In this document: positions 3,219 through 52,561 of the stretch, in pieces
Layout of the letters: every line of letters begins with the position of its first letter
Numbering within the stretch: the first letter of the stretch is position 1
Virus record (IMG/VR): IMGVR_UViG_3300034073_003542
Coordinates: 124,001-188,000 of that record
Reading direction: 5' to 3' (one strand)
Length of the DNA stretch: 64,000 nucleotides
Program-made: the position numbers and the translations under genes
Notes under the pieces: model-generated
What the model was told of the DNA's origin: nothing
Seen by the model: the letters and a program-made list of their open reading frames with translations, nothing else
Databases searched by the model: none

Positions 3219-3844
3219 TGTCGATATAAAATTAGTGGAAAATCTGCAAATATTCCTTTATAATTTCCTTTTACTAAAGATTGACAAAATAAGCTATCTT
3301 CTGATCTTTCTCTAGATTTGTCTTCGTCAAATTTAATTATGTTAAATATGTTGCGTTTAACTGCTATATGAGCATGATGTATTTTTTTGTCTCTACATTT
3401 TACATTAGTGCTATGTTTTCTTCCTGTTGGCAATTCTATATCTGTAAATGTGTTTATTTTATTTATATCGGTTAGATTTAGAGACGGATATTTATTTGAT
3501 TTGAATTTGTTGTAAGAGTGTAGCATATAGTCATAATCACCCAATATTTTCTTAGTTGTCTCTATTTTTTGTGGATGTGGAATATCGTCAACATCGAAAA
3601 ACACAATTACTTCATTCTGAGCTAACTCTGCTCCTTTATTTCTTGCCCACGCGGCATTTTGTCTGTGTTTATTGTAATGTATAAGAAATTTTGGAAGGGT
3701 CGTATTGATATCCAGATGAGTTGCTTCGCTACATACGATTAAAGTTTCATCTGGTAACTGAGTTTGTCCCTCAAATAAAGGCAAGAGAGAATGTAAATAG
3801 TGATGATCACCACTATAACACGTAATACATAAAGTTATTTTCAT
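3215..3844 (-). CDS. GT2-family glycosyltransferase (paralog of neighbour)
   Basis: AAWARNKGAELAQNEVIVFFDVDD, HPQKIE (shared with neighbour HPQKCE), SEDSLF. Confidence 0.8.
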   Translation of the reverse strand: MKITLCITCYSGDHHYLHSLLPLFEGQTQLPDETLIVCSEATHLDINTTLPKFLIHYNKHRQNAAWARNKGAELAQNEVIVFFDVDDIPHPQKIETTKKILGDYDYMLHSYNKFKSNKYPSLNLTDINKINTFTDIELPTGRKHSTNVKCRDKKIHHAHIAVKRNIFNIIKFDEDKSRERSEDSLFCQSLVKGNYKGIFADFPLILYRQ

Positions 3845-5579: not shown

Positions 5580-6776
5580 ATGGAGAAAAATATGAATATC
5601 AAAACTCGCCGCTCTGCATTTACCCTTGTCGAACTTCTAGTTGTAATTGCTATTATTGGTTTATTAGTAGCAATTTTACTCCCAGCCCTTTCTTCTGCTA
5701 GAAATTCTGCTCAGGCAGCAGCAAGCGGATCAAATTTAAGCACATTTGGTCGTGGTTTCATGATTTTCTCCACAGAAGATAAGCGATCACGCATGAGTAG
5801 CGGCGCTTTTGATCATTTAAGAGATGGAGATGTTAGAAAAGTTGGATGGGTTGCTGATATTATTAGGATTAAGGTGTCAAATCCAGGTAAGGCGCTTGAT
5901 CCAGCTAATACTTATCAGGTAAATGAAAAGGTTGCCGACTATATTGGAGCTACCAATACAACTAAAGCTAATCCTGTTCGCTGGAATAATAAAACAGCAG
6001 ATGTTCATTTTGGTGGAGCTAATGGCCCCACAGATTTTGCTGGATCACCAACACAAGCACAAAAGAATAAATTATGGGAAGACGGATATAACACAAACTA
6101 TGCAACAACATGGCAGTTTAGTCGTGGCGATGTTGTTCCTGGGTCTGACGGAAAGATTAATTCTAATGGAGCTATGAATCCTGTAACATCTGATCCTTCT
6201 AAATGTCCTCTAGATGGTGACGGCCCATTAACAGAAAAGAAATTAACTGGTGGAGGAGTAAGTCGTGATAGAGTTGCTGTAATGGGTGCGGCTCGTCCAG
6301 GCGACGGTTCTGATGCTCTTGTTACTGATGCAATGTTTACCACCTTTAATAATTTCTTTGGAACAGATCAAACAATGATTACAACTGGAGGTATTTTAGT
6401 TGAATCATTTACTGATGGAATGAATTGTCCTTTTACTGATGTTACTCTTGGTGGTGGCACAGATCAAAAAATTCATGAAATTAATGATATTTTCCCTATT
6501 CATGGTTCTCGTAAAACAACTGTTGGAGCAAATACTCTTCTTACAGGAGGATATGCCCAAGTTTTATTTGCGGACGGTCACGTTGCCAAAATTGAGGATG
6601 TGGGCGGTTATCAAGATAATCCTGACAGTTGGCTAGGCCCATATAAAACTGGTGGTGTTCCAACAGCCTCTTCGTTTGAAATTAATAAGAGTGGCTATGA
6701 TGAAGTTAGAGAACTGATCTGGCTCCATCAAATAGGTAACTCGTCAGGTGGTGTTGGCGGAGGTTCTGTAGAGTAA
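5580..6776 (+). CDS. DUF1559-type prepilin N-terminal cleavage/methylation domain protein with H-X-DG C-terminal motif
   Basis: RRSA|FTLVELLVVIAIIGLLVAILLPALSSAR...SNL; C-terminal H...GGYAQVLFADGHV. Likely start at ATG 5592 after GGAG. Confidence 0.9.
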   Translation: MEKNMNIKTRRSAFTLVELLVVIAIIGLLVAILLPALSSARNSAQAAASGSNLSTFGRGFMIFSTEDKRSRMSSGAFDHLRDGDVRKVGWVADIIRIKVSNPGKALDPANTYQVNEKVADYIGATNTTKANPVRWNNKTADVHFGGANGPTDFAGSPTQAQKNKLWEDGYNTNYATTWQFSRGDVVPGSDGKINSNGAMNPVTSDPSKCPLDGDGPLTEKKLTGGGVSRDRVAVMGAARPGDGSDALVTDAMFTTFNNFFGTDQTMITTGGILVESFTDGMNCPFTDVTLGGGTDQKIHEINDIFPIHGSRKTTVGANTLLTGGYAQVLFADGHVAKIEDVGGYQDNPDSWLGPYKTGGVPTASSFEINKSGYDEVRELIWLHQIGNSSGGVGGGSVE

Positions 6777-7520: not shown

Positions 7521-8270
7521 TTAGTCTTTTACCTTATTCTCCTCTATCCACTTAATATACGAACTCACCCTGGTGTGACCAGACTCTTTATTATAGCGTC
7601 TACGTGTCTTTGTGTCAATCGTTTCCGATACAAAACTATTTACACCAGCTAATTTGCCGTCGATAAATAAACCGCCCCCACTATCACCGCTCTGTATAAA
7701 AAATCCAAGCTCTTTTTGTTGGCGTGTCCCAACAGGAAACGGACAAAAAATCATTTCTGGTTTTGATCTATAGATATAGTTTAATCCAGCCCTCTTATTT
7801 CCGTCATTATATAGTTTTTCGTCATGAAATCTCCCAGTAAATCCATAGCCAGCAACTTCCACCTTCTTACCTGTTTCGTTGCGATCAGTAAATAGTTCTG
7901 GATATTTATCTAATTCAAAGCTTTTCTGAGAATATCCTAGAGCTAAATCTACAGTCGCAAATGTTTTTGAGTTATAGTCTTTATGTATAAACACTTTTTC
8001 TAAAAGAAACTTTTTGGTCCCATGAACCACAACACAAATTTCTCTGTCATCAACAACATGAGCAGCCGATAAAACGTGGTGATCGTCAATCATTATACAA
8101 GAACCACAATAAACTCCACCCTTGTCATCAGAAGCAATCAATAAACACACAAAAGGAAACTCGTTACCTTTTTCTATGTATTTTTCGTCTTTAGTATTTG
8201 GGTCAGTAACGCCCCCATAAGATATGGCTGTTAGAAATATAGCTAACAATAGTTGTTTTAAATATGTCAT
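7521..8270 (-). CDS. Secreted trypsin-like (S1) serine protease
   Basis: Signal peptide; catalytic motifs VLSAAHV, DLAL, GDSGGGLF. Confidence 0.92.
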   Translation of the reverse strand: MTYLKQLLLAIFLTAISYGGVTDPNTKDEKYIEKGNEFPFVCLLIASDDKGGVYCGSCIMIDDHHVLSAAHVVDDREICVVVHGTKKFLLEKVFIHKDYNSKTFATVDLALGYSQKSFELDKYPELFTDRNETGKKVEVAGYGFTGRFHDEKLYNDGNKRAGLNYIYRSKPEMIFCPFPVGTRQQKELGFFIQSGDSGGGLFIDGKLAGVNSFVSETIDTKTRRRYNKESGHTRVSSYIKWIEENKVKD

Positions 8271-12778: not shown

Positions 12779-15334
12779 TTAAGAATTAATCAAACCACCA
12801 ATAGCTACTTTAAACGCCTCATCTTTTTTAACCGCAGAAAACCACTTATTGCGATAATCTCGATTATTATCAATCTCTGTGAGACTGCCAGGATTGCTTG
12901 TTCTCATAGTATACTTGAAAGCTGGTGACTTGTCAAGCTCACTCTTTAGCTCTTGTCGTAGTGTTTTAATGTCTAGAGGAGCAAAGCTAGTAGAACTGCT
13001 TGCAAAATCAATCTTAGTAGCTTCGTCTGTAATAGTTCTTTGTTGCATATCCATTAGTCTCTTCATTTTCTGAATACCGCTATAAATAGATCGACTACTA
13101 ATTTGATCTAGGCCATATACCTTTAGAATACTATCAATATGAGCATAGTATTCGTCTAGCTTTAGTTCACAAGCACCAATCCTGATTTTATCTGTTTGGT
13201 TAGTAAAGAAGTCGCCCATAATCAAGTAATCAATATGGTCTACAATTTTCTTGTTCTTAACATACTTCTTATAATCAAACCCAAAAACACTAATCATATG
13301 GTACAGAATTTGACCGACAGAGGAATGATTGGCTCCATAACCCCACTGACTATCATCAATATTATCCATTGACACACGGATTTTATCAGCAATAGACATA
13401 TAATCCAAGTACTTGTCTAGCTTTTTGGCTGACTTTTTGATTTCACGGATCATCCATGTATTAAAGTCGATCAACTCATAATCTTCTTTCAGTTTTTCCA
13501 CAGACTTTTCTTTGATAGCATAGATATTTCCAGAAACACCCAAAATGTCTTTCATTTCAAGATAATAATTATGGATTGTATTGAGTCCCACAAATCCTTC
13601 ACAAGAAATATATCTGGTGATAGGAATGTATACAATCTCTTCCATATCTTCAAGAGACTCCAAATGATCTTCATTAAGAGTTTTTAGATAAGGAGCGTGA
13701 CCATAGTTAGTATCCAGAGCAACTGTGTTAGAATCATCGCCACACAAGAAGAATAGATCATCACTACTTACAGAACCCGTCTTAGCTCTTGCCTTGCGGG
13801 TTTGAGCGATAAGGTATTTGTAGTCTGAAACCTTCTTGAAGTTTTCAAGACCAACATCATTGATAAGATCATCAACACCCACAAGACTTTCGGTATGATC
13901 CTTGGTATCTACAATAAGATAACAATAACAGTTATTCTGCTTGTAATACGCACTAAGAATCTTTTTAGCTTGATTGAGACTCTTTATATCGCAATAGAAA
14001 AACTCAACATTAGACTCTGTATAACCTCCACCCCAACTACTAGTTCCTAGAGTTCCAGAGTAGATTTGCGTGGTAAGAGCAATCTTAGTACGAGAACGTC
14101 TGGCAGCATAATAGTAGCCGAAAACATACAAAGCTTTATCGGCACTGAGATTATATGATAGGTCTGCTCTATCACTAAGATTATAGGTCTTTTGTGTTGT
14201 TGGACAAGTCCAAGACGCACCAACTCCCCAATCATTAATACTGCGGAGCTTATTAAAGGTCTGGATTGCTTCTACACGAGTTTTGCAGGTAGAAATCTTG
14301 TCGGAAAATTCCTTTTTGAGAGAATCGTAGATTTCTTGTGTCTTAGCTCTAAGAGTCTTGATAACAGCTTTAGTGTACTGCAATCCCTCGCGGCTTATAT
14401 CCATGTCGAGTTCACCAATTCCAAACTCGATTTCTAGATAAAGATTCTTGCTATTAATGTTAGACAAAAAGGACTTGTAATTAGTGGCGTTTTCTTTTGC
14501 TTTTTGATTCCATTGAGCAATGTGGGCTTGTTCCTCTTTTTCTACATCACCAATAAGATGTGTAGTATCTACTGGATAAGCAATATTTCCCATAATAGCG
14601 ATAACATTAGAGCCAACATTATGATACGCATTAGGAAATAGATTGTTGGAATTAGTATTACAAACATTCCAATTATCTCCAGAAAGAAGAATATTACGAT
14701 TGGAATAATCCTTCTTGAAGTCAATACCATATCCACCAAAAATGGTAGGCTTTTGCTTTAGGTAGTGAAATACTCTGACTGCTTTTTGAGAGAACTCAGA
14801 ATAATCGTATCGCTTAACGGCAAAACTGATTTCCAAACCATTTGGTTCAGTTGTATCGCAAGAGTGCATCAAATTAAGTGTTGGGATTCCATCATCACCA
14901 ATACTGGCGATATATGTATATTGCTTACCATTAAAAAAGCTTGTTGAAGTAAAGCTCTTAGTATAAGCAAAAGGACTCTTACTTCCTAGACCAAGACATC
15001 CAACAAAATCATTGCTGGTATTTTTGGTTGAAGCTCCATAAGTTGTATAAAGCTTCTCCATATCGGTCTGACTAAGACCTGTGCCAAAATCCCGAACCTT
15101 AAAATTAGGGTCGGTATCACTTGGAAGATAAACATGAAAAGGATTGGTATTTTTTGCAGCAATATGTGCGTCGTTTGCATTGGTGCAAAGTTCACGAATT
15201 ACGGCCCCAATTTTATCTGAATATAAAGAATTGCTCAAGACGTTAAACATCTTGGCGGATTGCTGAATAGTGAACTGATTTTCGCTCTTAACACCACGGG
15301 AATGAACTTCAACTGTCTTATCTGCCAATTTCAT
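12779..15334 (-). CDS. rIIA: RIIA-like protein with N-terminal GHKL (Hsp90-like) ATPase
   Basis: LYSDKIGAVIRELCTNANDAH, VRDFGTGL, YGASTK, GCLGLGSKSPFAY, LDMDISREGL. Confidence 0.88.
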   Translation of the reverse strand: MKLADKTVEVHSRGVKSENQFTIQQSAKMFNVLSNSLYSDKIGAVIRELCTNANDAHIAAKNTNPFHVYLPSDTDPNFKVRDFGTGLSQTDMEKLYTTYGASTKNTSNDFVGCLGLGSKSPFAYTKSFTSTSFFNGKQYTYIASIGDDGIPTLNLMHSCDTTEPNGLEISFAVKRYDYSEFSQKAVRVFHYLKQKPTIFGGYGIDFKKDYSNRNILLSGDNWNVCNTNSNNLFPNAYHNVGSNVIAIMGNIAYPVDTTHLIGDVEKEEQAHIAQWNQKAKENATNYKSFLSNINSKNLYLEIEFGIGELDMDISREGLQYTKAVIKTLRAKTQEIYDSLKKEFSDKISTCKTRVEAIQTFNKLRSINDWGVGASWTCPTTQKTYNLSDRADLSYNLSADKALYVFGYYYAARRSRTKIALTTQIYSGTLGTSSWGGGYTESNVEFFYCDIKSLNQAKKILSAYYKQNNCYCYLIVDTKDHTESLVGVDDLINDVGLENFKKVSDYKYLIAQTRKARAKTGSVSSDDLFFLCGDDSNTVALDTNYGHAPYLKTLNEDHLESLEDMEEIVYIPITRYISCEGFVGLNTIHNYYLEMKDILGVSGNIYAIKEKSVEKLKEDYELIDFNTWMIREIKKSAKKLDKYLDYMSIADKIRVSMDNIDDSQWGYGANHSSVGQILYHMISVFGFDYKKYVKNKKIVDHIDYLIMGDFFTNQTDKIRIGACELKLDEYYAHIDSILKVYGLDQISSRSIYSGIQKMKRLMDMQQRTITDEATKIDFASSSTSFAPLDIKTLRQELKSELDKSPAFKYTMRTSNPGSLTEIDNNRDYRNKWFSAVKKDEAFKVAIGGLINS

Positions 15335-16897: not shown

Positions 16898-17062
16898 CTA
16901 GTCGTCTATTATAAAACTAGCAACAAAATACACGAGGATGCCTGGAACAACGCCAGTCATTATAATACCAACAAGAGTTGCTAGTCTAAGTAATGTAACA
17001 TCAACATTGTATTTGTTAGCTAAAAAACTACAAACACCCATAAATTTTGGTTTAGCGTTCAT
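16898..17062 (-). CDS. PspC-domain membrane mini-protein (54 aa)
   Basis: Below the ORF-track cutoff. Manual translation MNAKPKFMGVCSFLANKYNVDVTLLRLATLVGIIMTGVVPGILVYFVASFIIDD matches the PspC pattern GVCxxLA...xxR...xYxx. ATGA overlap with the ligase stop. Confidence 0.75.
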   Translation of the reverse strand: MNAKPKFMGVCSFLANKYNVDVTLLRLATLVGIIMTGVVPGILVYFVASFIIDD

Positions 17063-20837: not shown

Positions 20838-21218
20838 TTATCCACCAAAAACCACACACCAATATAGTCGCCCATTTCTATTAGGGCTGAAAGAATATCC
20901 CATATATTTGTATGAGGCACTTAGAATATTCTTCTTATGTCCCCAACTATTCATCCATACTTTCATAACTTCGTTTGTATTTTTTTGACCCCACGCAATA
21001 TTTTCGCCCGCCCTATCAAAACCCAAGTCCATAATATCTCTCATTGAACTATGTTTTAGTTGGTCATTTTCTGCCATCCAATCACAATGCTCAAACGCAT
21101 ATTTCATTAATTTGTCATTCAGAACCAAAAGATTGAGTGGTTTTGGTTTGCGCCAAATACTCCAAGGTTTATATTCAGAACGATATTGATTATGTAGAGT
21201 TAATAGACTCTCACTCAT
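20838..21218 (-). CDS. CAP/SCP-domain protein
   Basis: HNQYR, AFEHCDWM, LKHS, AGENIAWGQ, WMNSWGHKKNIL, YWCVVF. Confidence 0.9.
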   Translation of the reverse strand: MSESLLTLHNQYRSEYKPWSIWRKPKPLNLLVLNDKLMKYAFEHCDWMAENDQLKHSSMRDIMDLGFDRAGENIAWGQKNTNEVMKVWMNSWGHKKNILSASYKYMGYSFSPNRNGRLYWCVVFGG

Positions 21219-36694: not shown

Positions 36695-37510
36695 TTACTT
36701 GTTTACTTTAATTAAATTTTTAACTTTGTTATATTTTCTTTTTAATCCAATATCTAAACGATCTTGATATAAATAGTTAGCTATTTTAACTACAGCATCC
36801 AAACTAGAAACACGTATTCTTGAATCTTTATGTCCTTTTTTTGATATATTTTTTTGAATTTTGTATTTTTTGATTTTGATCTTATTAAATAAAGATACTA
36901 TACTGGACCAATCTTGCTCGTATGTAGAACCAAGAATAAACTGTTTTGCTTTATTTGTAATATAAAAACATCCGTCTCCATCAAAATATCCTCTATAAAA
37001 TAGATAGTGCTTATTTTTAGGTATCAGTTTTAATAATTTATTTGGAGGAGTATAGTTTTTTTTGTTAAAGTCAAAAGATATTAATTTAGAAACAAGGGCT
37101 ATATCATTAATTGCAAGTGTAATATTTTTTTGTCTTTTAACTCCTTTTTTATCCACCCTCTCTTTTCTAATAAATAAACTCCACTTTCCTACTTTAGTAA
37201 AACAGTTTTTTAGGATCTTATAGTCAGTAAATAAAATTTGACACTGTAAACTACAATATTTATGATTTTTTGATGATTTATAAAGGAATCCATCAGCCCA
37301 TAAAAACCCTAAAATATAAATTTCTTCATCTGTTAAGTCTTTAAAAGATTTATTGTACCAATCTGTTTTTCTAGGAGCATATCTTCTAATATCATATTTA
37401 GAAAGTTGACCATAAACGTGATTGGTTGTACATCCTAATTTTTTAGCTATTAGAGAAGCGGGATTATTTTCTTTAATAAATAATCTATATAATAATTTCT
37501 TTGCTATCAT
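36695..37510 (-). mobile_element. Free-standing LAGLIDADG homing endonuclease
   Basis: Two motifs, YILGFLWADG and FYRGYFDGDG; N-terminal HTH. Confidence 0.88.
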
Positions 37511-39557: not shown

Positions 39558-40118
39558 TCATTTAAAAGCTAACTCCCAATGACTTGCACAAACAGGCAAA
39601 TATTTTTCTTCGCATCCTAATTCCACAGAATTACCTTCGATGGTAGGAATCCCATCTATCATTTTCAGATTGAATACAGCCTTTTGTCTACAATAAAAAC
39701 ACGTAGTCTTAATTTCATCAATAACATCAGCTATAGATAATAATAAAGCAGAAGCAGGAAATGGTTCTTTTCTAAAATCAGTTCTTAAACCATAACAAAT
39801 AATAGGTGGACTACCTGTATATGTAGCTCTCCTCATACATTTAATGATTTCGGTTGATAAAAATTGTACTTCATCAACTAAAATAATATCAGCATCTTCA
39901 TGCCAGCCAAACATAGTTTGGTCTTGTTGAATAATAAAATCCGCCTCGGTTTCTAATCCGGCTCTAGATTTTACCGTTCTTTCTCCAAAACGAGTATCAA
40001 TAGCTGGCTTAACTACATCTACTTTCTTACCTTGTTGACGATAAGAATGAGCGGTTGCTAATAAATCAAGCGTTTTGGCACTTCCTACAACCCCATACTT
40101 AAAATAGAGTTTAGCCAT
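39558..40118 (-). CDS. tdk: Thymidine kinase
   Basis: LYFKYG...AKT, VKSRAG, ILVDEVQFL, YGLRTDF, CxxC...C Zn site, YLPVC..H. Confidence 0.95.
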   Translation of the reverse strand: MAKLYFKYGVVGSAKTLDLLATAHSYRQQGKKVDVVKPAIDTRFGERTVKSRAGLETEADFIIQQDQTMFGWHEDADIILVDEVQFLSTEIIKCMRRATYTGSPPIICYGLRTDFRKEPFPASALLLSIADVIDEIKTTCFYCRQKAVFNLKMIDGIPTIEGNSVELGCEEKYLPVCASHWELAFK

Positions 40119-40987
40119 TATTTATATTCCTTATAACATTTATTGTTAGCTATTGAATTAATTATTCCATGACTGATATTATAGTCCTTAGCTATATGTC
40201 TATGTGTTTCTTTTCCTTTAGATAGTCTTTTTCTTATTTCTTTAACTTGTGTAAGATTTAATTTTCTTTGACTTAATAAATATTGTTCATATTTTATTCT
40301 TTGTTTTATTATCTTATCAAAATTTTTCTTTTTTCTTTTTAGGAATATTGTTGCGTCCTTATACATAAAATCCATTAGTTTTTTAATTTCTTTGTACCCA
40401 TATAATCTAATATCGCAAGTATAAGTGTTTTGTTTGGTTTTTTTATATTTTACCATAAAAGAAGATATATTTAATTTTCTTTTAAAGAACCTTAATAAAT
40501 ATTCACTAAAGTCACTATTAGAAATAATCATAAAGGTATATTTATTTTGATTTTTACTCTTCGTAACAGATATACCTCCATCACCATCAAAATATCCTCT
40601 TATAAAGTGATGAATTAAATTTTTAGGTATGTGTCTGTATGGAAATTTTAAGGTATAACTTTTTTGATTATCTAATCCCTTATTAATTAAGTGATTAGTA
40701 AAAATTTCTCCGTATATTTTGATATATTTATATTTACTTTGTTTATTTTTGTTGTTTGGAGTATAATGTTTCGAATCTCCTATTTTCCCAGAATATTTTG
40801 TGTACTTTTTAAAGTAACGCAATATCTCTATATCTCTAGCCTGTAATTCAATTTGAACGTACTTATTACTTTTCTTAGTAGAGATATGACCATCTGCACA
40901 TATAAATCCAAATAAATACGCTTTATCTTCTGTATCTATGACTTTAAAATAATCGTGATCTTTATTATGTATATGTTTATTATTCAT
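40118..40987 (-). mobile_element. Free-standing LAGLIDADG homing endonuclease
   Basis: AYLFGFICADG and HFIRGYFDGDG; C-terminal HTH. Confidence 0.88.
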
Positions 40988-42005
40988 TTTCTTTTAGCAG
41001 AAAGTTATTGTTGATGACTTTAAAACTTATATCTGAATCTTTACTTCTAACAACTATCCCCTCTGCTTGTTGTTGTGGAGAAGCGTTTGGAAAGAAGTCT
41101 TTATATTTTATGTCGGATAAAGTAAATAGCTCATTAATTGTATATTTAAAATTATCTCCTTGTTCGATAATTGGAACAAATTTAAGTTCTATTCTCTTTA
41201 TAATATCTAACGCATCGTCAATTGGTAGCTTTTTATTTGTTTCAATATCTACAACGTTGAATATATAGATGTCTGGTTCTGTTACCTTCATCTTATTTCC
41301 TTGTATATTTCCAATTACCTCTCCCTGAATAGCTACTTTAAATCCATCTTGATGTAATTTTCTAAGCTTATTTTCTATGTCATACTTCTCGCTTAGTTTC
41401 CAGAACATATGGTCGGGTTTTTCTTTGTATGAATAATTTCGCCCACAAACATGATAATCTCCCGCTGCATCAATTAAAAATGTGGATGATGTACCATCCA
41501 GCTTTAATGATATATAGTATGGGCGACCCCAAAGAGCCTCGATAAAACGATACTTGTCGTTATTCTGAACTCTTTCTTCGTCTGTCTTAGAAATAGGCCA
41601 ACTAAATCCGCCCTTAACATCTCCTTGAATAGCTGTTGGTACTGGTGGTTCATATTTTTCTATTCCTAGAAACTCTGTAACATCAGCACCTTCAACCGCT
41701 AAACCTATTTCTGGGAATTTATCTATAGGCATAGCAACGCCTTGGGATAAGACTTTTTTTAATTTTATGCTCTTGAGTCTATACTTGTTGATACCATCAC
41801 GCCAGCAGGATTTTTTAAGAAATTCGTAGCGAGGCTCGTCTGGCAATAGGCTGTCTATCTCAAAAAACAAACAGAGGTCGTCTACATTAAATTCATCTTT
41901 CTTGACAACGCATTGCCAATCAAGAATCTTAGCAAGAACAATCTGATCTGCCACCTCAATAGGAAGAATTTCTTTGATTTTTTGTATTGATGCTAGCTGA
42001 CGCAT
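40980..42005 (-). CDS. ATP-dependent RNA ligase (DRB0094/Rnl2-like)
   Basis: RQLASIQKI...ADQI..A.ILDWQCVVKK, KLDGTS, VCGRN, IQGEV, EGIVVR, FKVINNNFLLK. Confidence 0.92.
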   Translation of the reverse strand: MRQLASIQKIKEILPIEVADQIVLAKILDWQCVVKKDEFNVDDLCLFFEIDSLLPDEPRYEFLKKSCWRDGINKYRLKSIKLKKVLSQGVAMPIDKFPEIGLAVEGADVTEFLGIEKYEPPVPTAIQGDVKGGFSWPISKTDEERVQNNDKYRFIEALWGRPYYISLKLDGTSSTFLIDAAGDYHVCGRNYSYKEKPDHMFWKLSEKYDIENKLRKLHQDGFKVAIQGEVIGNIQGNKMKVTEPDIYIFNVVDIETNKKLPIDDALDIIKRIELKFVPIIEQGDNFKYTINELFTLSDIKYKDFFPNASPQQQAEGIVVRSKDSDISFKVINNNFLLKENE

Positions 42006-44230: not shown

Positions 44231-45076
44231 ATGAAAAAAACAAAGAAATGTAAACAGTGTGGAAAAAGAAAATCTATAGACAAATACTATAAACACAAGA
44301 CTTGTAAAGATGGATATAGAGATATTTGTAAGATATGTATTAATAAATTATCTAAAGAATATGTAGAGAAAAATAAAGAAAAAATTGCCCAACGACAAAA
44401 AAAATATAGAGAAAAAAATAAAGAAAAGCTTTCTCAACAAAGAAAAGACTATAGAGAGAAAAATAAAGAAAAGGTCAAAAAACAAAAACAGGCCAACTAT
44501 TTAAAACACAAAAATAAGACATTACAAAAAAGTAAAGAATATAAAGAAAAACTTAAAAAAGAAAATCCAGAAAAATTAAAATTATGGCGAAAAAATTATT
44601 GTATTAGACATAAAAATAAATTAAAAGAATATAAGCGAAACTATCACCAAAAAAACAAAGTAAAAATAAGAAATATAAGGAATAAATATAGAAAATATAA
44701 ATACGATTCAGATATTGGATATAGAATGCAAGAGAATATTAGGAGTAGAATGAGATATCTCTTGAAAGGATATTATAAAAGTAAAGCCACACTAGAATTA
44801 TTAGGATGTTCGGACGATCAACTTAAAAAACATCTAGAAAAACAATTTGAGCCAAGTATGACTTGGGATAATTACGGATATTATGGGTGGCATATTGACC
44901 ATATCAGACCATGTTCTAGTTTTGATTTATCTGATCTAGAACAACAAAAACAGTGCTTTCATTATACGAATTTACAGCCATTATGGGCAAAAGACAATTA
45001 TATTAAAGGTAATAAGATACCTATTTCTTCCAGTGATGATCTTCATGGCCTGCCATTAAACACCCATACGGAATAA
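44231..45076 (+). mobile_element. HNH homing endonuclease (inverted orientation)
   Basis: CKQC...CKIC, Lys-rich helical repeats, WHIDHIRPC...CFHYTNLQPLWAKDN; start placed at MKKTKK. Confidence 0.85.
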
Positions 45077-46409
45077 TTTCATCCACTATATTTCCAAGAT
45101 TAAATTTTTGGATTTGGTTCTTTACTTTTTCAGCATTTTTATAAGCAGATGGAAGTTCTGTTATATCCATTTTTCCTGTGTAGAATCTTACATCTAGACC
45201 CCTAGTATCTTCATCAAACAATTCATATCCTGTTTTGTTTTGTAGAGATATTTTAGTGTATTCAGTTCTACTCATTTCGCGGCCAGCACCATGACTTGTA
45301 AAACCTAAATTAGTTTCGGTTTCTTCTCCATTAACAATAAGAATACCATCTCTCATATTAAGAGGTATTAATCTTAGACCATTAGTTGAGTCAGGAACAA
45401 ATTCATTTAATAATGGTGTTGCTCCTTTGGCATGGATGTAAGTATTATCTTTTTTAAACACAAAATTATGTTCATTCCAATAATTGTCATGTATATTTAC
45501 ATTAATTTTACTAGCAATTTCCGTATGAATAAGCGTATGATTTAGCTTTGTCCATTCTCTAACTACTTGTAAAGCGTTCCAATATGTAACACCTTCTTCT
45601 GTGTCCATTGGAATCCAGCCTAAATTATCATTAACGTTTGGAGCTATTTCTTTACGAAACTTCTCAGCTATGTCATTTCCCTTCTTGAATAATAAAGCTC
45701 CGAAAGAGCGACTGCCATGATGAGTAACTAATACTGTTTCTCCAGAGCTTTTTAAGTAGCCTACAAATAGGAAATGGTTGCCGTTTCCTTGAGTTCTTAA
45801 ATCTTTTTGGGCTTTATCTAGACTTTTTTCTCCAGATAAATATAGATTGTTAAGAATATCGTTCTTTAAAGGTTCTGGTATAATATCTTTTGGATTTTGT
45901 CTTCCACCAGCACCAAAATGTGTTATTTTTTCTGCTTTATCTAGGACAATTTTTGGATCTATTTTTCCTAGATTAGAAAACATAACTGAACAACATACGT
46001 CGGCACTGTGAAATTTTGGGTGGATTGCATTTAAAGTTTGTATGACTCCACCCACAGGAATATCAAACTCGCCCGTAGGGCAAGCGTCAGGCATCACAGC
46101 AGCATTTATAGCGGTTGGAGCCACCAAAATATTGTGCATAGCCCGCGTGACCGAAAACATATTGTTAACTTCGGCCTCATTTTTTGGGTCGATTTCTATA
46201 TTGCAATGAAAATTGATTGGTTCATCCCTTGGTTCCATTGTTTTTGGTGGAAGAGGAACAAAACGTGTCTGAATTTCGTTATACAGATTTTCTTCGCTGT
46301 ACTTGTCTCGATTTTGATTTGCCCACTCAATAGCTGACTTAAACCATTTCCCAGGGGTAAAACCCATACTGATTAAAGATTGACCAGTAATTGACATCAT
46401 ACACCTCAC
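45021..46409 (-). CDS. rtcB: RtcB-family RNA 2',3'-cyclic phosphate ligase
   Basis: VMPDACP, IPVGG, ADVCC, GNGNHF, THHGSR, HN, HAKGATP, SHGAGR.MSR, ELPSAYK. Confidence 0.93.
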   Translation of the reverse strand: MRCMMSITGQSLISMGFTPGKWFKSAIEWANQNRDKYSEENLYNEIQTRFVPLPPKTMEPRDEPINFHCNIEIDPKNEAEVNNMFSVTRAMHNILVAPTAINAAVMPDACPTGEFDIPVGGVIQTLNAIHPKFHSADVCCSVMFSNLGKIDPKIVLDKAEKITHFGAGGRQNPKDIIPEPLKNDILNNLYLSGEKSLDKAQKDLRTQGNGNHFLFVGYLKSSGETVLVTHHGSRSFGALLFKKGNDIAEKFRKEIAPNVNDNLGWIPMDTEEGVTYWNALQVVREWTKLNHTLIHTEIASKINVNIHDNYWNEHNFVFKKDNTYIHAKGATPLLNEFVPDSTNGLRLIPLNMRDGILIVNGEETETNLGFTSHGAGREMSRTEYTKISLQNKTGYELFDEDTRGLDVRFYTGKMDITELPSAYKNAEKVKNQIQKFNLGNIVDEIIPYGCLMAGHEDHHWKK

Positions 46410-48307: not shown

Positions 48308-49660
48308 TGTTATTCCTTAAAAAGAGATTCTAAAATTTCGATCAGTTCAGCCTTGAGAGTATCAACTGAGCGGTCATCAGTATCCATGAATTGTCCCACA
48401 CTATTATTCTTAATAGAGAATTGATAGAGAGGCTTACCTTCTTTCCAAACGGCATAGATATCATCATGAATATAGTATGAGTAGTATGTTCCTACTGGAT
48501 TTGCCGTACACCACTTAGTATCCTTACCAATAACGCAATACTTTAGGTGCTGCAATTCCTTTTCTTCTTCTGTTGGATTTGGTTGAAGTTTGGCTACTTT
48601 GAAAACCTTATATATTTTATCTTCATAAGCAACATCAATTTTGGTTCCCTTTGGGAGAGTACCATCGGTCTTCATTTTAATCCACTGATTTTTGCTGGTT
48701 TGCTTAATTTCCAGCATAGTTGCTTGCAATTGATCATGTGATAATCCTAATTGAGTAGGAGTAGCTTCGTTAAGCTTATCGTAGCCCTTTTCTTCATAGA
48801 GATGTTTATTTTCTCGGAAAAATTTTGCTGTATCAATAGCAGCTTCAATATCTTCGATATAAGCATTGGGTTTAGTAGTAAGATAACCCAAAACATAGTC
48901 GATATAATATTGCTGATGCTTTTCGTTAGAGACTTTGCTCTCAATTGAGCAAATAATATCCTTCTTTAATTTTTCTAGTTGTGGATGAAATTCACGATTT
49001 CCTGCGACCATTCCCAAATAAGATTCTTGGGTGAATTCTTCTTTTTTACCTTTGAGTCGCTTAATTGTTTCTGCAAACTTTTCTTCAAGATTCATCATAC
49101 ACTCCGTTTGAGTTGGCTTCCCGTGCTTTGTCTCAATTGTACCACAACCAAACTATCTGTCAATCGCCCAATTCATTTTCTTGAATAGGCCCAAAAACAT
49201 CAGCAAAAGTAAATCCTTCTAAATGGGTAAATAGTGATGGAATGTTATACATAGGTATTTTAATAGTAAATGACAGATCCATTCCGTCTGGTGGATCATT
49301 TGTTGTCCAGCTAATATTTGTTACTTGTTGATCTAAAATAAACTTTTTTAGAGCTATTCGTTTTTTCTTACGGTCCTTAAAATATCTACGAATCATTGGA
49401 ACAAGTTGTGGGCTTTTTGGGTCCAAGCAATACTAAAAGAAAAACAATCTCTACTAATTCTTAAATCTATAAGATTCATTTCTATCGCTAGTCCTGCTTT
49501 TTTCTGGTTACAAAATTTTGTTAAAAGGTCTTGATGATTTATTTCTGGAGATTTATATATCTCGCGTAATATTTCTATTACATATTTCTTTTCATTAAAA
49601 TATTCTTCAATCATATTATCTCTATTATAATGTGGTGTATTTATAACAAAGGAGAAAATT

Positions 49661-49993
49661 ATGTGTGATAATAGTTACCCAATATGTTCTACTATTTTAC
49701 CTATTCCACCTATAGAGGTGTTTGAAAAAGCTATTGATCCTTCTGATCGGCACTTTTTAACCAGTTATCCTCATGCTACATTTTTTAGAGACATTGGTCA
49801 ATTTAATCACTGGTTTTATGAATACAAAATAGATTCCCTAGAAATTTATCAACCTATGATTATGCCACCCTTTGTTATTCCTGTTGTTTTATCTCCGCAT
49901 CCTGTTCCAGAACCTTCTTTATTTATGGTGGCTCCTATTGTCTTTCTAAGTATTTTTGGGGGCAGATTTCTACTAAAATCCATACGGATATAA
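49661..49993 (+). CDS. PEP-CTERM sorting-domain protein (no obvious signal peptide)
   Basis: C-terminal PVPEPSLFMVAPIVFLSIFGGRFLLKSIRI; RBS AAGGAG. Confidence 0.7.
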   Translation: MCDNSYPICSTILPIPPIEVFEKAIDPSDRHFLTSYPHATFFRDIGQFNHWFYEYKIDSLEIYQPMIMPPFVIPVVLSPHPVPEPSLFMVAPIVFLSIFGGRFLLKSIRI

Positions 49994-49997
49994 CCGT

Positions 49998-50025
49998 ATT
50001 GTATCAGACCTGGGCGATCTGTCAA
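49998..50025 (-). promoter_or_regulatory. sigma70-type promoter firing antisense across ORF 49661..49993
   Basis: TTGACA-N16-TACAAT. Confidence 0.7.
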
Positions 50026-50714
50026 GTTCTATTCTTTGTCTTATAATATAGAATAAGACCCAATGGTATAATTCCATAGATTAAAATATTTAACGATGGC
50101 TCTGGAACTATAACCCAAGATATAGTTGATGCAATATTGCTGCTAATATTTAATCCATTACTTCCTTGTCTTATATCGTTAATAATGAAACTAAATGTAT
50201 AGTTTGTTCCTCCTAATAGGGGAAATACGATATTGCTATTGTTGTTTAATGTTTGAGAATCTCCATAGTTATTTTGAACTGTTAGACCATTAATTCCGGT
50301 ATTACTTCCAGATATTTCTCTTGCGTATGATACCAAAAATTCTCCATCATAAATAGGAATAAAAGAATATGACCATACTAAATTATTAGATACTCTAGCT
50401 AATGTACCTGACCCGTTTGTATTGCTACTCCAACCATATTCAATATTGATATTTCCAGTAATTTCGTTTATAATATCTGACTCAAGATTAATATATGACG
50501 TAGTTGTTCTAGCTCCAGAAGTTAGTTGAGCAAATGTTGCAATATCTGTAGGATTTGATAGGGAGGAATTATTGCTAACAAAAGTATTTGATAATTGAGT
50601 AACCGATGAAGATATTGTTGAATTAGAAGTCGATCCAGGCAAAAGAATAGAAGAATAGCCATATTGAGATAGGGCTAGAAAAATAGACAAAAAAAGAATC
50701 GTTGTTTTTAGCAT
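50022..50714 (-). CDS. Secreted Ser/Thr/Asn-rich PEP-CTERM protein
   Basis: Signal peptide; C-terminal IVPEPS, then TM helix, then KTKNR. Confidence 0.85.
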   Translation of the reverse strand: MLKTTILFLSIFLALSQYGYSSILLPGSTSNSTISSSVTQLSNTFVSNNSSLSNPTDIATFAQLTSGARTTTSYINLESDIINEITGNINIEYGWSSNTNGSGTLARVSNNLVWSYSFIPIYDGEFLVSYAREISGSNTGINGLTVQNNYGDSQTLNNNSNIVFPLLGGTNYTFSFIINDIRQGSNGLNISSNIASTISWVIVPEPSLNILIYGIIPLGLILYYKTKNRT

Positions 50715-51783
50715 TTTAGGTAGGATTTTGTTAAAGGTAGGAAGCGTATAATTAACTTATACACCAATTTGTTTATATTCCAGCTTTGGAATCAGTTCAT
50801 TGGTTTCCGAGGCAATTGTCTCGATTGATATTTTTAAGACTTTGTTAGTGTTTGGATTTTCTGTGTTAGCTATATTTACGATCTTTTGAATTGCTTCTAT
50901 AATCTTATTGCCGTCAAGATTTTTATTAAGAGAGAAATAAGTAGTAGTCAATCCTCTTCTCCTAAATCTCGTAGTCTTTCTCCTGTTTCTGGATGACAAT
51001 ATAGGTTTCCTATATATTCACCATAAATTTTTTCTGATCCAGAAATATGTTTTCCCATCCATAATGATCCCTCAATTTCGCCACCTAGTGATCTGATAAA
51101 TTCCGCAACTTTATCGTAACAGCTTTCACATAAATCGCATGAGTGTGTTTGACAATCTTTGTTAGATGAAAATCCCCAAGAAGCAAACATTGAACAATAT
51201 TCAACATTTCCAAATTCGTCTACGCAACTATTTTTGCAGACATTACAGATAACGTCTGTGACTGTTTCTATTTGTTTTTGTCCGAAGGTTTTCATTTGCC
51301 CTTTGTTCTAATTGCTATGAACAAATCTAGTAGTTTCGATAAAAATTTCATGGTGAGCTAAATATAACGAATAATAGGAGAGCTATCACGAATGTTATTA
51401 TTTGGGCTTCTTGCATTATTTTGTCTCGGGCGGTTTATATCCGCATGTCCAGTTTTCTACTCCTGCATCAATTAAAGATTGTGTTTCTTTGTCTTTTTCT
51501 GAGATAGTATAACCCTTAGTTTCTTTAGAAGTTCTGACAAATTCTTCATCCCATGATCCAACGGGACCATCACCAATCAAAGATTTCCATTCATCTATTT
51601 TTTTTTGTGAAAGAGGCGGGACATAATGAAATCTCTTATCTTTTAGTTCTAATTCCGTTAGAGTTTCCAATAGCTTTTTTTCTATAGTTGGCTCTACTTT
51701 TTCAAAAGATTCCATATATCCTTTTAGCCAATAACAGAAATTTTCCGGCGTCATCTAATATGTCCTTTTATAAAGTAAAAATA

Positions 51784-51855
51784 AGACCGCAGTTGGAATC
51801 GAACCAACAAATGCTGTTTTGCAGACAGCCACCAACGCCAATTGATTTTGCGGCC
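51784..51855 (-). tRNA. tRNA-Cys(GCA)
   Basis: GGCCGCA/TGCGGTC acceptor stem, GCTGT-CTGCAAA-ACAGC anticodon arm, GTTGG-TTCGATT-CCAAC T-arm, U73 discriminator; no encoded CCA; promoter at 51882..51909. Confidence 0.92.
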
Positions 51856-51913: not shown

Positions 51914-52561
51914 TTAATTTTGACCTCCCATTGCACTAAGTTCTTCTGGAGTATAAGAGCAATTAACTTCTGCTCCCCTACTTTTAGCCGTTCTCATTCT
52001 CTTGACGTTAGAAGCCGCAGAACTAAATGCTGCAAAAGAATTTGCCGCCGCATAATTTGCCACTCCAAGAGCATTAATTCCCATAGAAGTAGCATTAGAG
52101 AAAGCGTCTTGATTAGCTCCAAGGAATGTAAATTTCCAACTATAAACATTAGTCTGATGTTCAATCATTTGTTTAATTTGGTCTAATTTAAATTCATGGC
52201 TAGAATTTTCTCCTCCATCAGTAACTATAACAAAAGTTACCAATCCTGGGCGGTCTTTTTCTTCCATATTACTTAATCTTGCACCAGCTTCATTAATAGA
52301 ACGTCCTACTGCATCTAGAAGTGCCGTCATTCCGCGAGGAACAAGATTATATTCTTTTACATTTTGAATAGATTCACCCTTATATACAAAATTATATTCA
52401 TTATCAAACTCTACAAGAGTAAGCAAACATTCTCCAGGTTCCTTTTTTTGTTCAGAAATAAAGTGGTTGATACCGTTTTGTGCTTCTATTTTTGTAGCCT
52501 CCATTGAACCACTTCTGTCAACAATTAATGTTACGTCTGTTAAATCGTTTCTCATTTTCAT
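51914..52561 (-). CDS. vWA-domain protein
   Basis: IVDRSGSM (MIDAS DxSxS), GMTALLDAVG, IVTDGGENSS, FTFLGANQDA. Confidence 0.92.
   Translation of the reverse strand: MKMRNDLTDVTLIVDRSGSMEATKIEAQNGINHFISEQKKEPGECLLTLVEFDNEYNFVYKGESIQNVKEYNLVPRGMTALLDAVGRSINEAGARLSNMEEKDRPGLVTFVIVTDGGENSSHEFKLDQIKQMIEHQTNVYSWKFTFLGANQDAFSNATSMGINALGVANYAAANSFAAFSSAASNVKRMRTAKSRGAEVNCSYTPEELSAMGGQN

What the first reader, a model, noticed from the sequence alone, without database searches (positions are those of the whole stretch)
49661..50714. Two convergent phage-encoded PEP-CTERM (exosortase-target) proteins
Seen: VPEPS, TM helix and basic tail on both; one has a signal peptide and a Ser/Thr/Asn-rich body, the other has no signal peptide. 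Established: PEP-CTERM proteins are sorted by exosortase to the surface of Gram-negative, often EPS-forming bacteria, including PVC. No exosortase is in the window. Inference: the phage uses host exosortase to display a (possibly glycosylated) surface protein, and the signal-less copy may act as an exosortase decoy or inhibitor. With DUF1559, PspC, the protease and the glycan cluster, this suggests an envelope-remodelling or superinfection-exclusion programme.
Basis: partly seen in the sequence, partly recalled or inferred. Interest (0 to 1): 0.65.

Follow-up and report, generated by a model that had tools for sequence, protein, structure and literature searches.

The report
Phage-borne PEP-CTERM envelope protein gene pair
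A 210-kb phage that most likely infects a planctomycete carries two tail-to-tail genes whose products end in the tag read by the bacterial exosortase sorting system, so the phage probably plants its own proteins in the host envelope, which I found described nowhere for this sorting system.

Summary
ORF A (49661-49993 +, 110 aa) and ORF B (50022-50714 -, 230 aa) both end in VPEPSL, a hydrophobic helix and a basic end. They are the only two such ORFs in the 209,847-bp phage, against 0 in 60 simulations. ORF B nevertheless has real homologues. Its four closest sit on phage or mobile contigs. Eight more distant ones carry canonical PEP-CTERM or VPDSG-CTERM tails at the aligned position, and the PEP residues are nearly invariant. 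ORF B is therefore a divergent, AT-drifted member of a jelly-roll PEP-CTERM family. ORF A is an orphan with a good ribosome-binding site and no signal peptide; its tail is the only link to the family. The phage has no exosortase. Its pseudopilin is 75-83% identical to proteins of three Planctomycetota genomes. Each of those genomes has one exosortase and 8-30 PEP-CTERM proteins, nearly all with VPEPS. A promoter-like motif, GGTGTAT, precedes ORF A, ORF B, the pseudopilin and a secreted protease. Use of the host exosortase is likely but not shown. The decoy idea for ORF A is untested.

The parts
50022..50714 (-). ORF B, 230 aa. It has a signal-peptide-like N-terminus, a Ser/Thr/Asn-rich jelly-roll beta-sandwich (residues about 22-204), then VPEPS, a C-terminal helix and a basic end.
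   Evidence: ORF. Homologues at E 3e-38 to 4e-4. Alignment with nearly invariant PEP. AF2 model with pLDDT 78. ESM Atlas feature score 0.97 and TM 0.80 to PEP-CTERM clusters.
50649..50714 (-). Codons 1-22 of ORF B: the predicted Sec signal peptide.
   Evidence: Hydropathy peak at residues 1-20. Helix 3-17 precedes the first strand. Aligned homologues have the same N-terminal hydrophobic segment. No dedicated signal-peptide predictor was available.
50094..50108 (-). VPEPS codons of ORF B, directly after the last beta-strand.
   Evidence: P204, E205 and P206 are nearly invariant in the 13-member family.
50025..50093 (-). C-terminal transmembrane helix and K/R end of ORF B.
   Evidence: Hydropathy. 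Helix 208-227.
49661..49993 (+). ORF A, 110 aa. It is Pro-rich with a net acidic N-part, has no signal peptide, and ends in VPEPSL, a hydrophobic helix and an R/K end. It is an orphan.
   Evidence: ORF. Only itself was found in the word search and in IMG/VR. Called as a gene on 4 contigs. GC3 is 0.21, like real genes. Codon score is 0.089, which is intermediate.
49650..49654 (+). AGGAG ribosome-binding site, 6 nt before the ATG of ORF A.
   Evidence: The same GGAG(A) spacing is seen before many genes of this phage (output).
49904..49990 (+). VPEPSL codons (49904-49921), then the hydrophobic helix and basic end of ORF A.
   Evidence: The two motif-coding stretches form the best inverted repeat of the region (49904-49926 and 50086-50108, 78%).
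49634..49640 (+). GGTGTAT promoter-like motif, 20 nt before the ATG of ORF A.
   Evidence: It occurs 13 times in upstream windows, against a mean of 1.4 for the 140 permutations of the same letters.
50759..50765 (-). GGTGTAT promoter-like motif, 44 nt before the ATG of ORF B. It overlaps the end of the upstream gene.
   Evidence: The same motif lies about 40 nt upstream of the closest ORF B homologue on related phage contig L003.
49998..50025 (-). Sigma-70-type promoter (TTGACA, 16 nt, TG-TACAAT) whose -35 box contains the stop codon of ORF B. It fires antisense through all of ORF A towards the next minus-strand gene at 49614.
   Evidence: It is one of 47 perfect matches on the minus strand, against 4 on the plus strand.
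49982..49999 (-). Short hairpin with a T-tract between the two genes. It may be a terminator for the ORF B transcript.
   Evidence: It has a 6-bp stem with 3 G-C pairs, so the evidence is weak.

Best explanation
ORF B is a phage-carried accessory gene for a Sec-exported jelly-roll protein with a divergent PEP-CTERM sorting tail. After export, the C-terminal helix holds the protein in the inner membrane with its basic end in the cytoplasm. The VPEPS motif then sits at the outer face, where the host's own exosortase can cleave it. The protein is thereby passed to the envelope or surface of the infected cell, most likely a planctomycete. ORF A is a real, lineage-specific small membrane protein with the same VPEPSL tail. 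It has no signal peptide, but its acidic, Pro-rich N-part and basic C-end fit an N-out/C-in topology, which would present its motif to the same enzyme. Both genes have their own GGTGTAT promoter-like element, shared with the phage's pseudopilin and secreted protease. They therefore look like part of one co-regulated set of envelope-directed proteins. What is shown: the tails, the family membership of ORF B by homology, the absence of a phage exosortase, and the presence of an exosortase and VPEPS substrates in the only bacteria that share a near-identical gene with the phage. What is inferred: export, cleavage by exosortase, topology of ORF A, co-regulation, and any role such as receptor masking or superinfection exclusion.
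For: The tripartite tails are unique to these two ORFs and far beyond chance. ORF B has 12 homologues in 1.84 billion representatives, and PEP and W200 are nearly invariant among them. Seven of 13 family members hit PF07589 and 3 hit VPDSG-CTERM; P0007 hits PEPxxWA-CTERM at 54 bits. The family profile finds the tails of curated PEP-CTERM proteins in G001-G003. Atlas feature score is 0.97, with 24 of 30 neighbours being PEP-CTERM clusters, and TM is 0.80 to one of them. The five phage or mobile copies keep VPEP although their contigs range from 34 to 62% GC and the helix sequences differ. They are split from the rest of the family by a 100/99 branch. The phage has no exosortase. The phage pseudopilin is 83, 82 and 75% identical to proteins of three Planctomycetota genomes, against at most 41% in 400 other genomes of the phylum. 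Each of those three genomes has one exosortase that passes TIGR02602 or PF09721, next to an EPS tyrosine autokinase, plus 8-30 PEP-CTERM proteins. Of the 36 tails I read from those genomes, 35 have VPEP and most have VPEPS. For ORF A: an AGGAG site at the right distance, GC3 of 0.21, gene calls on 4 contigs, and its own GGTGTAT motif.
Against: Neither protein is scored by PF07589, TIGR02595 or any other NCBIfam sorting-tail model, even at E<=10. HMMs I built from family tails and from host tails give only 7-9 bits. The helices are Ile/Tyr/Phe-rich and the basic ends are weak (K-T-K-N-R rather than RRRR). The phage is 35% GC and the candidate hosts are 65-70% GC. The 25 phage tRNAs, mostly for A/U-ending codons, soften this gap but do not remove it. 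Exosortase is common in the phylum (85 of 201 genomes), so 3 of 3 is only mildly informative. ORF A has no homologue, a mediocre codon score with a better-scoring antisense shadow frame, a very low-confidence Atlas structure, and a strong antisense promoter reading through it. No expression data could be obtained.
Confidence: 0.55

Rival explanations
1. The tails are relics. ORF B descends from a PEP-CTERM protein, but in this AT-rich phage the tail now works only as a plain C-terminal membrane anchor. The jelly-roll stays tethered on the periplasmic face of the inner membrane, where it acts much as the small early membrane proteins of T4 (Imm, Sp) do. No exosortase is involved.
For: No curated or home-made tail model scores the tails above noise. 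The basic cluster is weak and the helix composition is atypical. The closest homologue, P0003, has grown an extra hydrophobic segment after its tail, so the phage-branch tail is not under canonical constraint.
Against: VPEP is kept in all five phage or mobile copies across a 34-62% GC range, while the helix sequence drifts freely. That is the pattern expected if the motif itself is read by an enzyme. ORF A carries the identical VPEPSL hexapeptide with no other similarity to ORF B. The candidate hosts use VPEPS almost without exception.
Confidence: 0.22
2. ORF A is not a functional gene. It is a chance or decaying frame in the 376-nt leader of the minus-strand transcript that starts at the promoter at 50025-49998. 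It may be a remnant of an inverted partial duplication of a PEP-CTERM gene end.
For: A perfect sigma-70-type promoter reads antisense through the whole ORF. The codon score of 0.089 is 1.6 sd below real small genes, and 28% of known spurious frames score as high; the shadow frame scores 0.227. There are no homologues. Atlas pLDDT is 0.35. About 4 frames of this length are expected by chance in an AT-rich 210-kb genome (my estimate from base composition).
Against: A full tripartite tail with the neighbour's exact hexapeptide is not expected by chance (0 in 60 simulations). AGGAG lies 6 nt before an ATG. ORF A has its own GGTGTAT motif, 20 nt upstream. GC3 is 0.21 in frame. No other ORF fills the 407-nt gap; the longest minus-strand frame after the promoter is 44 low-complexity codons. 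No Rfam RNA was found there.
Confidence: 0.2
3. ORF A is a decoy or inhibitor that occupies the host exosortase. It would block sorting of host PEP-CTERM proteins, or time the sorting of ORF B.
For: ORF A has the same recognition hexapeptide as ORF B, which is also the modal host motif. It is small, has no folded cargo and no signal peptide. It lies next to ORF B and carries the same upstream motif.
Against: There is no direct evidence. No family of exosortase inhibitors is known to compare it with. Small cellular PEP-CTERM or VPDSG-CTERM proteins of 79-128 aa exist as ordinary clusters, so small size alone does not indicate a decoy. ORF A is absent from the related contigs L003-L006, which do keep ORF B.
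Confidence: 0.12

Closest known systems
PEP-CTERM/exosortase protein sorting (Haft et al. 2006, 2012; TIGR02595, PF07589; exosortase TIGR02602).
   Same: Both have an N-terminal signal peptide (ORF B) and a C-terminal PEP motif, helix and basic end at the very C-terminus. The body is Ser/Thr/Asn-rich. The candidate host has one exosortase next to EPS chain-length and tyrosine-kinase genes, and dozens of substrates.
   Different: Here the substrate genes are on a lytic-type jumbo phage and the enzyme is not. The tails fall below every curated cut-off. One of the two proteins lacks a signal peptide.
Small jelly-roll PEP-CTERM families named by NCBIfam (NF038129, the FxDxF family NF038126, and the PEPxxWA-CTERM proteins of alphaproteobacteria).
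   Same: They are similar in size (170-270 aa) and built as a signal peptide, one beta-sandwich and a tail. Distant homologues P0007-P0014 hit these models.
   Different: ORF B and its phage relatives hit them only weakly or not at all (18.9-20.9 bits against cut-offs of 50-65). They form their own branch.
Phage or prophage proteins that ride on host envelope-sorting machinery. Examples from my own knowledge: the Ltp lipoprotein of Streptococcus thermophilus phage TP-J34 (superinfection exclusion), T4 Imm and Sp, and prophage LPXTG proteins anchored by host sortase.
   Same: In each case a phage gene product carries a host-type sorting signal, is placed in the envelope by host enzymes, and changes what the cell surface does during infection.
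   Different: They use other sorting systems (lipoprotein signal peptidase, sortase A, or plain membrane insertion). None uses exosortase. The function here is not shown.
PEP-CTERM-domain protein HOG10 of the Dehalococcoides IME1 virus-like elements (bioRxiv 10.64898/2026.09.15.751708).
   Same: It is a mobile or viral element with a PEP-CTERM-annotated membrane protein.
   Different: That is a passing annotation in a small integrative element of a different phylum. No exosortase link is discussed in the passage read.

Membership tests
PEP-CTERM sorting domain (TIGR02595 / PF07589) | Score above the curated cut-off of the domain model. | tested here: not met
   Neither ORF A nor ORF B hits any family in Pfam or NCBIfam at E<=10. 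A six-frame search of the whole phage with PF07589 gives no candidates. The phage-branch relatives P0003 and P0005 reach 11.0 and 13.9 bits against a cut-off of 16.
PEP-CTERM sorting domain (TIGR02595 / PF07589) | Tripartite tail at the extreme C-terminus: PEP motif, transmembrane helix, basic cluster. | tested here: met
   Both ORFs have it. They are the only two in the phage, and none appear in 60 simulations. The basic clusters are weaker than the usual RRRR.
PEP-CTERM sorting domain (TIGR02595 / PF07589) | Homology of the whole protein to proteins whose aligned C-terminus is a recognised PEP-CTERM domain. | tested here: met
   This holds for ORF B only. It has 12 homologues, PEP is nearly invariant, and 7 of 13 members hit PF07589 while 3 of 13 hit VPDSG-CTERM. 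ORF A has no homologue, so for ORF A this feature is not met.
PEP-CTERM sorting domain (TIGR02595 / PF07589) | N-terminal signal peptide, so that the protein is a Sec substrate. | tested here: inconclusive
   ORF B has a typical n-h-c segment by hydropathy and a helix at residues 3-17, but no dedicated predictor was available. ORF A has none, and an in-frame stop lies 10 codons upstream.
PEP-CTERM sorting domain (TIGR02595 / PF07589) | An exosortase in the same cell. | tested here: inconclusive
   The phage has none. All three Planctomycetota genomes tied to the phage by a 75-83% identical pseudopilin have one. In G003 the exosortase and the pseudopilin homologue lie on the same 92.1-kb contig. 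The host itself is inferred, and the baseline in the phylum is 85 of 201 genomes.
PEP-CTERM sorting domain (TIGR02595 / PF07589) | Cleavage at or near PEP by exosortase. | not testable with these tools
   This needs expression and mass spectrometry. The complex prediction gave no verdict.
DUF1559 / H-X9-DG pseudopilin of the PVC bacteria (context gene at 5580-6776) | A prepilin N-terminal methylation domain, plus the DUF1559 body, plus the H-X9-DG C-terminal motif. | tested here: inconclusive
   N_methyl scores 28.7 bits (cut-off 21.2) and TIGR02532 scores 23.7 (cut-off 16.3). H-X9-DG scores 12.6 (cut-off 19). PF07596 is not hit. The protein is 83% identical to Planctomycetota proteins.

The most novel reading that the evidence does not exclude
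The phage runs a co-regulated envelope take-over set, marked by the GGTGTAT promoter-like motif, made of proteins that each hijack a different host-specific sorting machine. A near-perfect copy of the host pseudopilin would use the prepilin peptidase and pilus or T2SS machinery. A secreted protease would use Sec. ORF B would use exosortase. The signal-less ORF A would act as an N-out/C-in mini-substrate that jams or times the exosortase. That would be the first viral substrate-and-inhibitor pair for the exosortase system.
Probability: 0.12. Interest if true: 0.8.

Novelty: new variant of a known kind. Interest (0 to 1): 0.58.

Why it matters
Exosortase sorting is widespread, yet almost nothing is known about how its tag is read. 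Direct biochemical evidence is scarce, and I know of no viral use of it; two literature searches found only one passing annotation. This is a phage lineage that keeps VPEP through a swing from 34 to 62% GC while everything after the motif drifts. That makes it a natural mutagenesis series showing which parts of the tag matter. It also gives two small, easily expressed test substrates, one with cargo and one without. If the host link holds, the locus adds a third host sorting route, after lipoprotein and sortase routes, by which phages may remodel the surface of infected cells. It is also one of the few functional clues to phages of Planctomycetota.

Tried and rejected
So there were no reads, no expression data, no sample description, and read laying was not used.
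- Complex prediction on the G003 exosortase (residues 50-345) with the ORF B tail (residues 186-230) scored 0.06, which is no verdict. It counts neither for nor against binding.
- Single-sequence AF2 of ORF B failed with pLDDT 34. Only the 13-row alignment gave a usable model.
- Foldseek against PDB and BFVD, and VIA-align wide, gave only generic jelly-roll or CBM/GOLD/MAM-like matches (TM below 0.3, Z at most 8.8). No functional lead came from the fold.
- Home-made HMMs from the 12 family tails and the 36 host tails rank ORF A or ORF B first among 1,786 phage frames. The scores are only 7-9 bits (E 0.1-0.4), so this is not significant.
- No close relatives of ORF A, ORF B or the neighbouring vWA gene were found in IMG/VR, GTDB genomes, the JGI metagenome scan or GenBank phages.
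- The profile word search added nothing new.
- Phage RuvB is 46-47% identical to that of G001-G003, which says nothing about the host.
- Contigs of the same phage from other samples have no SNPs in ORF A or ORF B, so no selection test was possible.
- No Rfam family is present in 49300-50900.
- The other GGTGTAT-bearing genes could not be named, so the temporal class of the motif is unknown.
- A CCCACCTA element before the start codons of the pseudopilin and the ORF B homologues is not present upstream of the host genes. I dropped it as too weak.
- I considered and rejected a virion role for ORF B, because of its signal peptide and C-terminal membrane helix. I also rejected a spanin or holin role, because the topology is wrong.
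Full report
WHAT IS THERE. The window is bases 124001-188000 of a 209,847-bp IMG/VR virus record that CheckV rates complete. It is 35% GC, and almost every gene lies on the minus strand. At the reported place there are two convergent ORFs whose stop codons are 28 nt apart. ORF B (50022-50714, minus strand, 230 aa) starts with a signal-peptide-like segment. Its body is 42% Ser/Thr/Asn with no cysteine. It ends in VPEPSL, about 16 hydrophobic residues, and a K/R-containing end. ORF A (49661-49993, plus strand, 110 aa) is one of very few plus-strand ORFs. It has AGGAG 6 nt before its ATG. Its N-part is Pro-rich and net acidic (9 D/E against 4 K/R) with no hydrophobic N-terminus. It ends in the same VPEPSL, a 15-16-residue hydrophobic stretch, and an R/K end. 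An in-frame stop lies 10 codons upstream of its ATG, so no signal peptide is hidden there.

IS IT MORE THAN CHANCE. I applied a rule requiring PEP, an uncharged hydrophobic 14-mer and at least two K/R within the last 40 residues. It selects exactly these two of the 1,786 stop-to-stop frames of the phage. It selects none in 30 second-order Markov genomes and none in 30 shuffles of every frame's tail. The two proteins share nothing but the hexapeptide. The DNA that encodes the hexapeptide is the best inverted repeat in the region, at 78% over 23 nt. With identical peptides and strong codon bias, that repeat does not prove a duplication.

Pfam and NCBIfam give no family for either protein at E<=10. 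A six-frame PF07589 search of the whole phage finds no candidate. HMMs that I built from the tails of the ORF B family, and from 36 PEP-CTERM tails of the candidate hosts, place ORF A or ORF B first among all phage frames. The scores are only 7-9 bits, and the models match little beyond VPEPS. The reason is visible in the sequences. The phage helices are Ile/Tyr/Phe-rich and their ends are Lys/Asn-rich, as expected in 30-34% GC genes. The curated models expect Ala/Gly/Leu helices and an RRRR end.

HOMOLOGY RESCUES ORF B. The word-index search found only the protein itself. An exhaustive HMMER search of 1.84 billion representatives found 12 relatives with E from 3e-38 to 4e-4. In the 13-row alignment, the PEP residues and the Trp four residues before them are nearly invariant, alongside a GW motif and several Gly and Phe of the body. 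Seven of the 13 members hit PF07589 and three hit VPDSG-CTERM. P0007 hits PEPxxWA-CTERM at 54 bits and lies in an ordinary bacterial chromosome next to cox genes. The family profile also picks up the tails of curated PEP-CTERM proteins in three Planctomycetota genomes. The ESM Atlas agrees: its best feature hit scores 0.97 with 198 shared features to a PEP-CTERM cluster, 24 of 30 neighbours are PEP-CTERM clusters, and structural TM is 0.80 to another. An AF2 model built from the alignment has pLDDT 78. It shows a signal helix, an all-beta sandwich over residues 22-204, the motif directly after the last strand, and a helix at 208-227. Fold searches return only generic jelly-rolls such as GOLD, CBM61, MAM and the VesC C-domain, with Z at most 8.8. 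The body therefore gives no functional lead. My conclusion is that ORF B is a divergent member of a jelly-roll PEP-CTERM family by descent, although it fails the domain model.

A PHAGE BRANCH OF THAT FAMILY. The four closest relatives (48-29% identity) sit on short contigs full of small unannotated genes. Three of these contigs (L003 at 43% GC, L004 at 56%, L005 at 61%) also share other genes with this phage at 30-65% identity. The fourth (L006 and L007, 62% GC) lies next to an integrase, and it occurs in one of the JGI samples that also hold this phage. The five phage or mobile copies are separated from the rest of the family by a branch with 100/99 support. Their neighbours differ: a CAP-domain gene, a thioredoxin, and homologues of genes that lie 90 kb away in this phage. 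So this is a mobile accessory gene. All five copies keep VPEP, while the helix that follows drifts with GC content. I read this as selection on the motif itself.

ORF A. Several points support it being a real gene. Its ribosome-binding site has the spacing used by other genes of this phage. Its in-frame GC3 is 0.21, compared with 0.18 for ORF B and 0.22 for the pseudopilin. It was called as a gene on four contigs. It fills a 407-nt gap that has no other frame longer than 44 codons. Its tail cannot be a chance product. Other points count against it. It has no homologue anywhere, and it is absent from the related contigs. Its codon score of 0.089 lies between real small genes (0.24 +/- 0.10) and spurious frames (-0.05 +/- 0.20), and the antisense shadow frame scores higher. 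The Atlas structure has pLDDT 0.35, and the feature hits to PEP-CTERM or VPDSG-CTERM mini-proteins reach only 0.88 with 103 shared features, which is a lead and no more. I put the chance that it is a real gene at about 0.7-0.8.

TRANSCRIPTION SIGNALS. The phage has 47 perfect TTGACA-N15-18-TAnAAT sites on the minus strand and 4 on the plus strand, usually 20-60 nt before a start codon. One of them, at 50025-49998, has the stop codon of ORF B inside its -35 box. It points through the whole of ORF A to the next minus-strand gene, 376 nt away. Host-polymerase transcription should therefore run antisense to ORF A. A second signal is the 7-mer GGTGTAT. It is the most enriched of its 140 letter permutations in the -75 to -12 windows of 300 gene starts, with 13 occurrences against a mean of 1.4. 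It lies 20 nt before ORF A, 44 nt before ORF B, 37 nt before the pseudopilin gene, and 37 nt before the signal-peptide-bearing trypsin-like protease. It also precedes eight other genes, several of them in the part of the genome that lacks TTGACA promoters. It recurs about 40 nt before the closest ORF B homologue on L003. I take it as a phage-specific promoter element. I could not determine its timing.

PHAGE AND HOST. The phage gene content includes an rIIA homologue. It also includes endonuclease VII, RuvB, ThyX, thymidine kinase, DNA and RNA ligases, RtcB, PTH2 and two LAGLIDADG genes, and 25 tRNAs. There is no exosortase. The 398-aa prepilin-type protein at 5580-6776 is 83, 82 and 75% identical to proteins of three MAGs. 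These are labelled Pirellulales, Planctomycetaceae and Candidatus Kuenenia. Only that one gene is shared, and the bacterial loci are 65-70% GC. In 400 other genomes of the phylum the best match is 41%. This points to one narrow planctomycete clade as host or gene donor. The GC gap of more than 30 points is large. The phage tRNA set is rich in readers of A/U-ending codons, which is what an AT-rich phage on a GC-rich host would need. Each of the three genomes has one exosortase (E 1e-50 to 1e-62). The two I checked pass TIGR02602 and sit beside an EPS tyrosine autokinase. Each genome also has 8-30 PEP-CTERM proteins above cut-off. In G003 the exosortase and the pseudopilin homologue lie on the same 92.1-kb contig. 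Of 36 host tails that I read, 35 have VPEP and most have VPEPS, which is the phage motif. Exosortase occurs in 85 of 201 sampled genomes of the phylum, so its presence in all three is only modest evidence.

MECHANISM. I consider the following most likely. ORF B is exported by Sec and held by its C-terminal helix, with the basic end on the cytoplasmic side. The host exosortase cleaves it at VPEPS and passes it to the envelope. ORF A inserts N-out/C-in, as its acidic N-part and basic end allow, and presents the same motif. The export, cleavage and topology steps are all inferences. What the proteins then do is speculation, whether that is masking a receptor, excluding other phages or changing aggregation. 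The main rival is that the tail is now only an anchor (0.22). Others are that ORF A is not functional (0.20), and that ORF A is a decoy (0.12, a sub-case of the main reading).

COMPARISON AND NOVELTY. The system works like PEP-CTERM/exosortase sorting, and ORF B is a member by descent but not by model score. ORF A meets only the architectural definition. Full-text searches for PEP-CTERM with phage, and for exosortase with phage-encoded, found no study of viral PEP-CTERM proteins. The only trace was one passing annotation in a 2026 preprint on Dehalococcoides elements. The nearest functional analogues use other sorting routes: the Ltp lipoprotein, prophage LPXTG proteins, and T4 Imm and Sp (my own knowledge). 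I rate this a new variant of a known kind.

WHAT LED NOWHERE. The complex prediction gave no verdict. Scans of IMG/VR, GTDB genomes, JGI metagenomes and GenBank phages found no further close relatives. There is no Rfam RNA between the genes. There are no SNPs on which to test selection.

Noticed in passing
window 5580-6776 (+): A prepilin-type protein is 75-83% identical at the protein level to a protein of three 65-70% GC Planctomycetota genomes, although the phage gene is 40% GC with GC3 of 0.22. In 400 other genomes of the phylum the best match is 41%. It looks like a strongly constrained copy of a host pseudopilin, and it is the best host clue.
   Followed up: yes
whole phage; in the window at e.g. 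58707, 58252, 57635, 54765, 53336, 50025, 49163, 47681, 46474 (all minus strand): There are 47 perfect TTGACA-N15-18-TAnAAT promoters on the minus strand against 4 on the plus strand. Many have a TG extension, and almost all lie in genome coordinates 99-209 kb. This is a dense, host-sigma-70-driven gene block.
   Followed up: partly
window 49634, 50765, 5536, 8314, 15783; genome 2958, 6215, 16100, 96388, 98418, 104361, 105733: GGTGTAT, usually preceded by T-rich sequence, lies 20-58 nt upstream of 12-13 genes. It occurs 13 times against a mean of 1.4 for the permutations of its letters. It is also conserved upstream of the ORF B homologue on L003. It is a candidate phage-specific promoter of unknown timing.
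   Followed up: partly
window 51784-51855 (-) and genome 203300-205998: A tRNA-Cys lies 1 kb from the finding. A cluster of 24 further tRNAs lies outside the window. Most read A/U-ending codons.
   Followed up: partly
window 40980-42005, 45021-46409 and elsewhere in the window: There is an RNA-repair set: an RNA ligase with a PHA02142 OB domain, RtcB, a HAD_SAK_2 domain protein and PTH2. The last two were found in a pooled scan and I did not locate them.
   Followed up: no
window 36695-37510 and 40118-40987 (-): Two ORFs look like LAGLIDADG-type homing endonucleases. One lies directly beside the RNA ligase gene. The pooled Pfam scan found 2 LAGLIDADG_3 members; I assigned them to these ORFs by reading the sequences.
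   Followed up: no
window 12779-15334 (-): The 851-aa ORF is an rIIA homologue, 32-38% identical over its N-terminal half to rIIA of T4-like phages. The best hit is a 595-kb uncultured phage.
   Followed up: no
window 16901-17047 (-), 7521-8270 (-), 2601-3844 (-), 51914-52561 (-): Other envelope-related or secreted candidates are a PspC-domain mini-protein (42 bits), a trypsin-like protease with a signal-peptide-like N-terminus, two GT2 glycosyltransferases, and a weak vWA-domain protein 1.2 kb from ORF B. A CAP-domain protein also appeared in the pooled scan; by similarity to the CAP gene on L004 it is probably the ORF at 20838-21218.
   Followed up: partly
genome 190133-190324 (outside the window, minus strand): A second prepilin-like N-terminus in the phage is 42-60% identical to the N-terminus of the host pseudopilin.
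   Followed up: no
L065 (G001:C64) and L067 (G003:C10): In the candidate hosts the single exosortase sits next to a 754-760-aa chain-length-determinant and tyrosine-autokinase gene. In G001 a 288-aa ORF that looks like a prepilin peptidase by eye lies on the other side, but it got no NCBIfam hit.
   Followed up: partly
window 5573 (+) and 50724 (-); L003 and L004 upstream of the ORF B homologues: A CC(C/T)ACCTA element lies just before the start codons of the pseudopilin, ORF B and two ORF B homologues, in place of a GGAG site. It is not found upstream of the host pseudopilin genes. It is unexplained and may be chance.
   Followed up: partly
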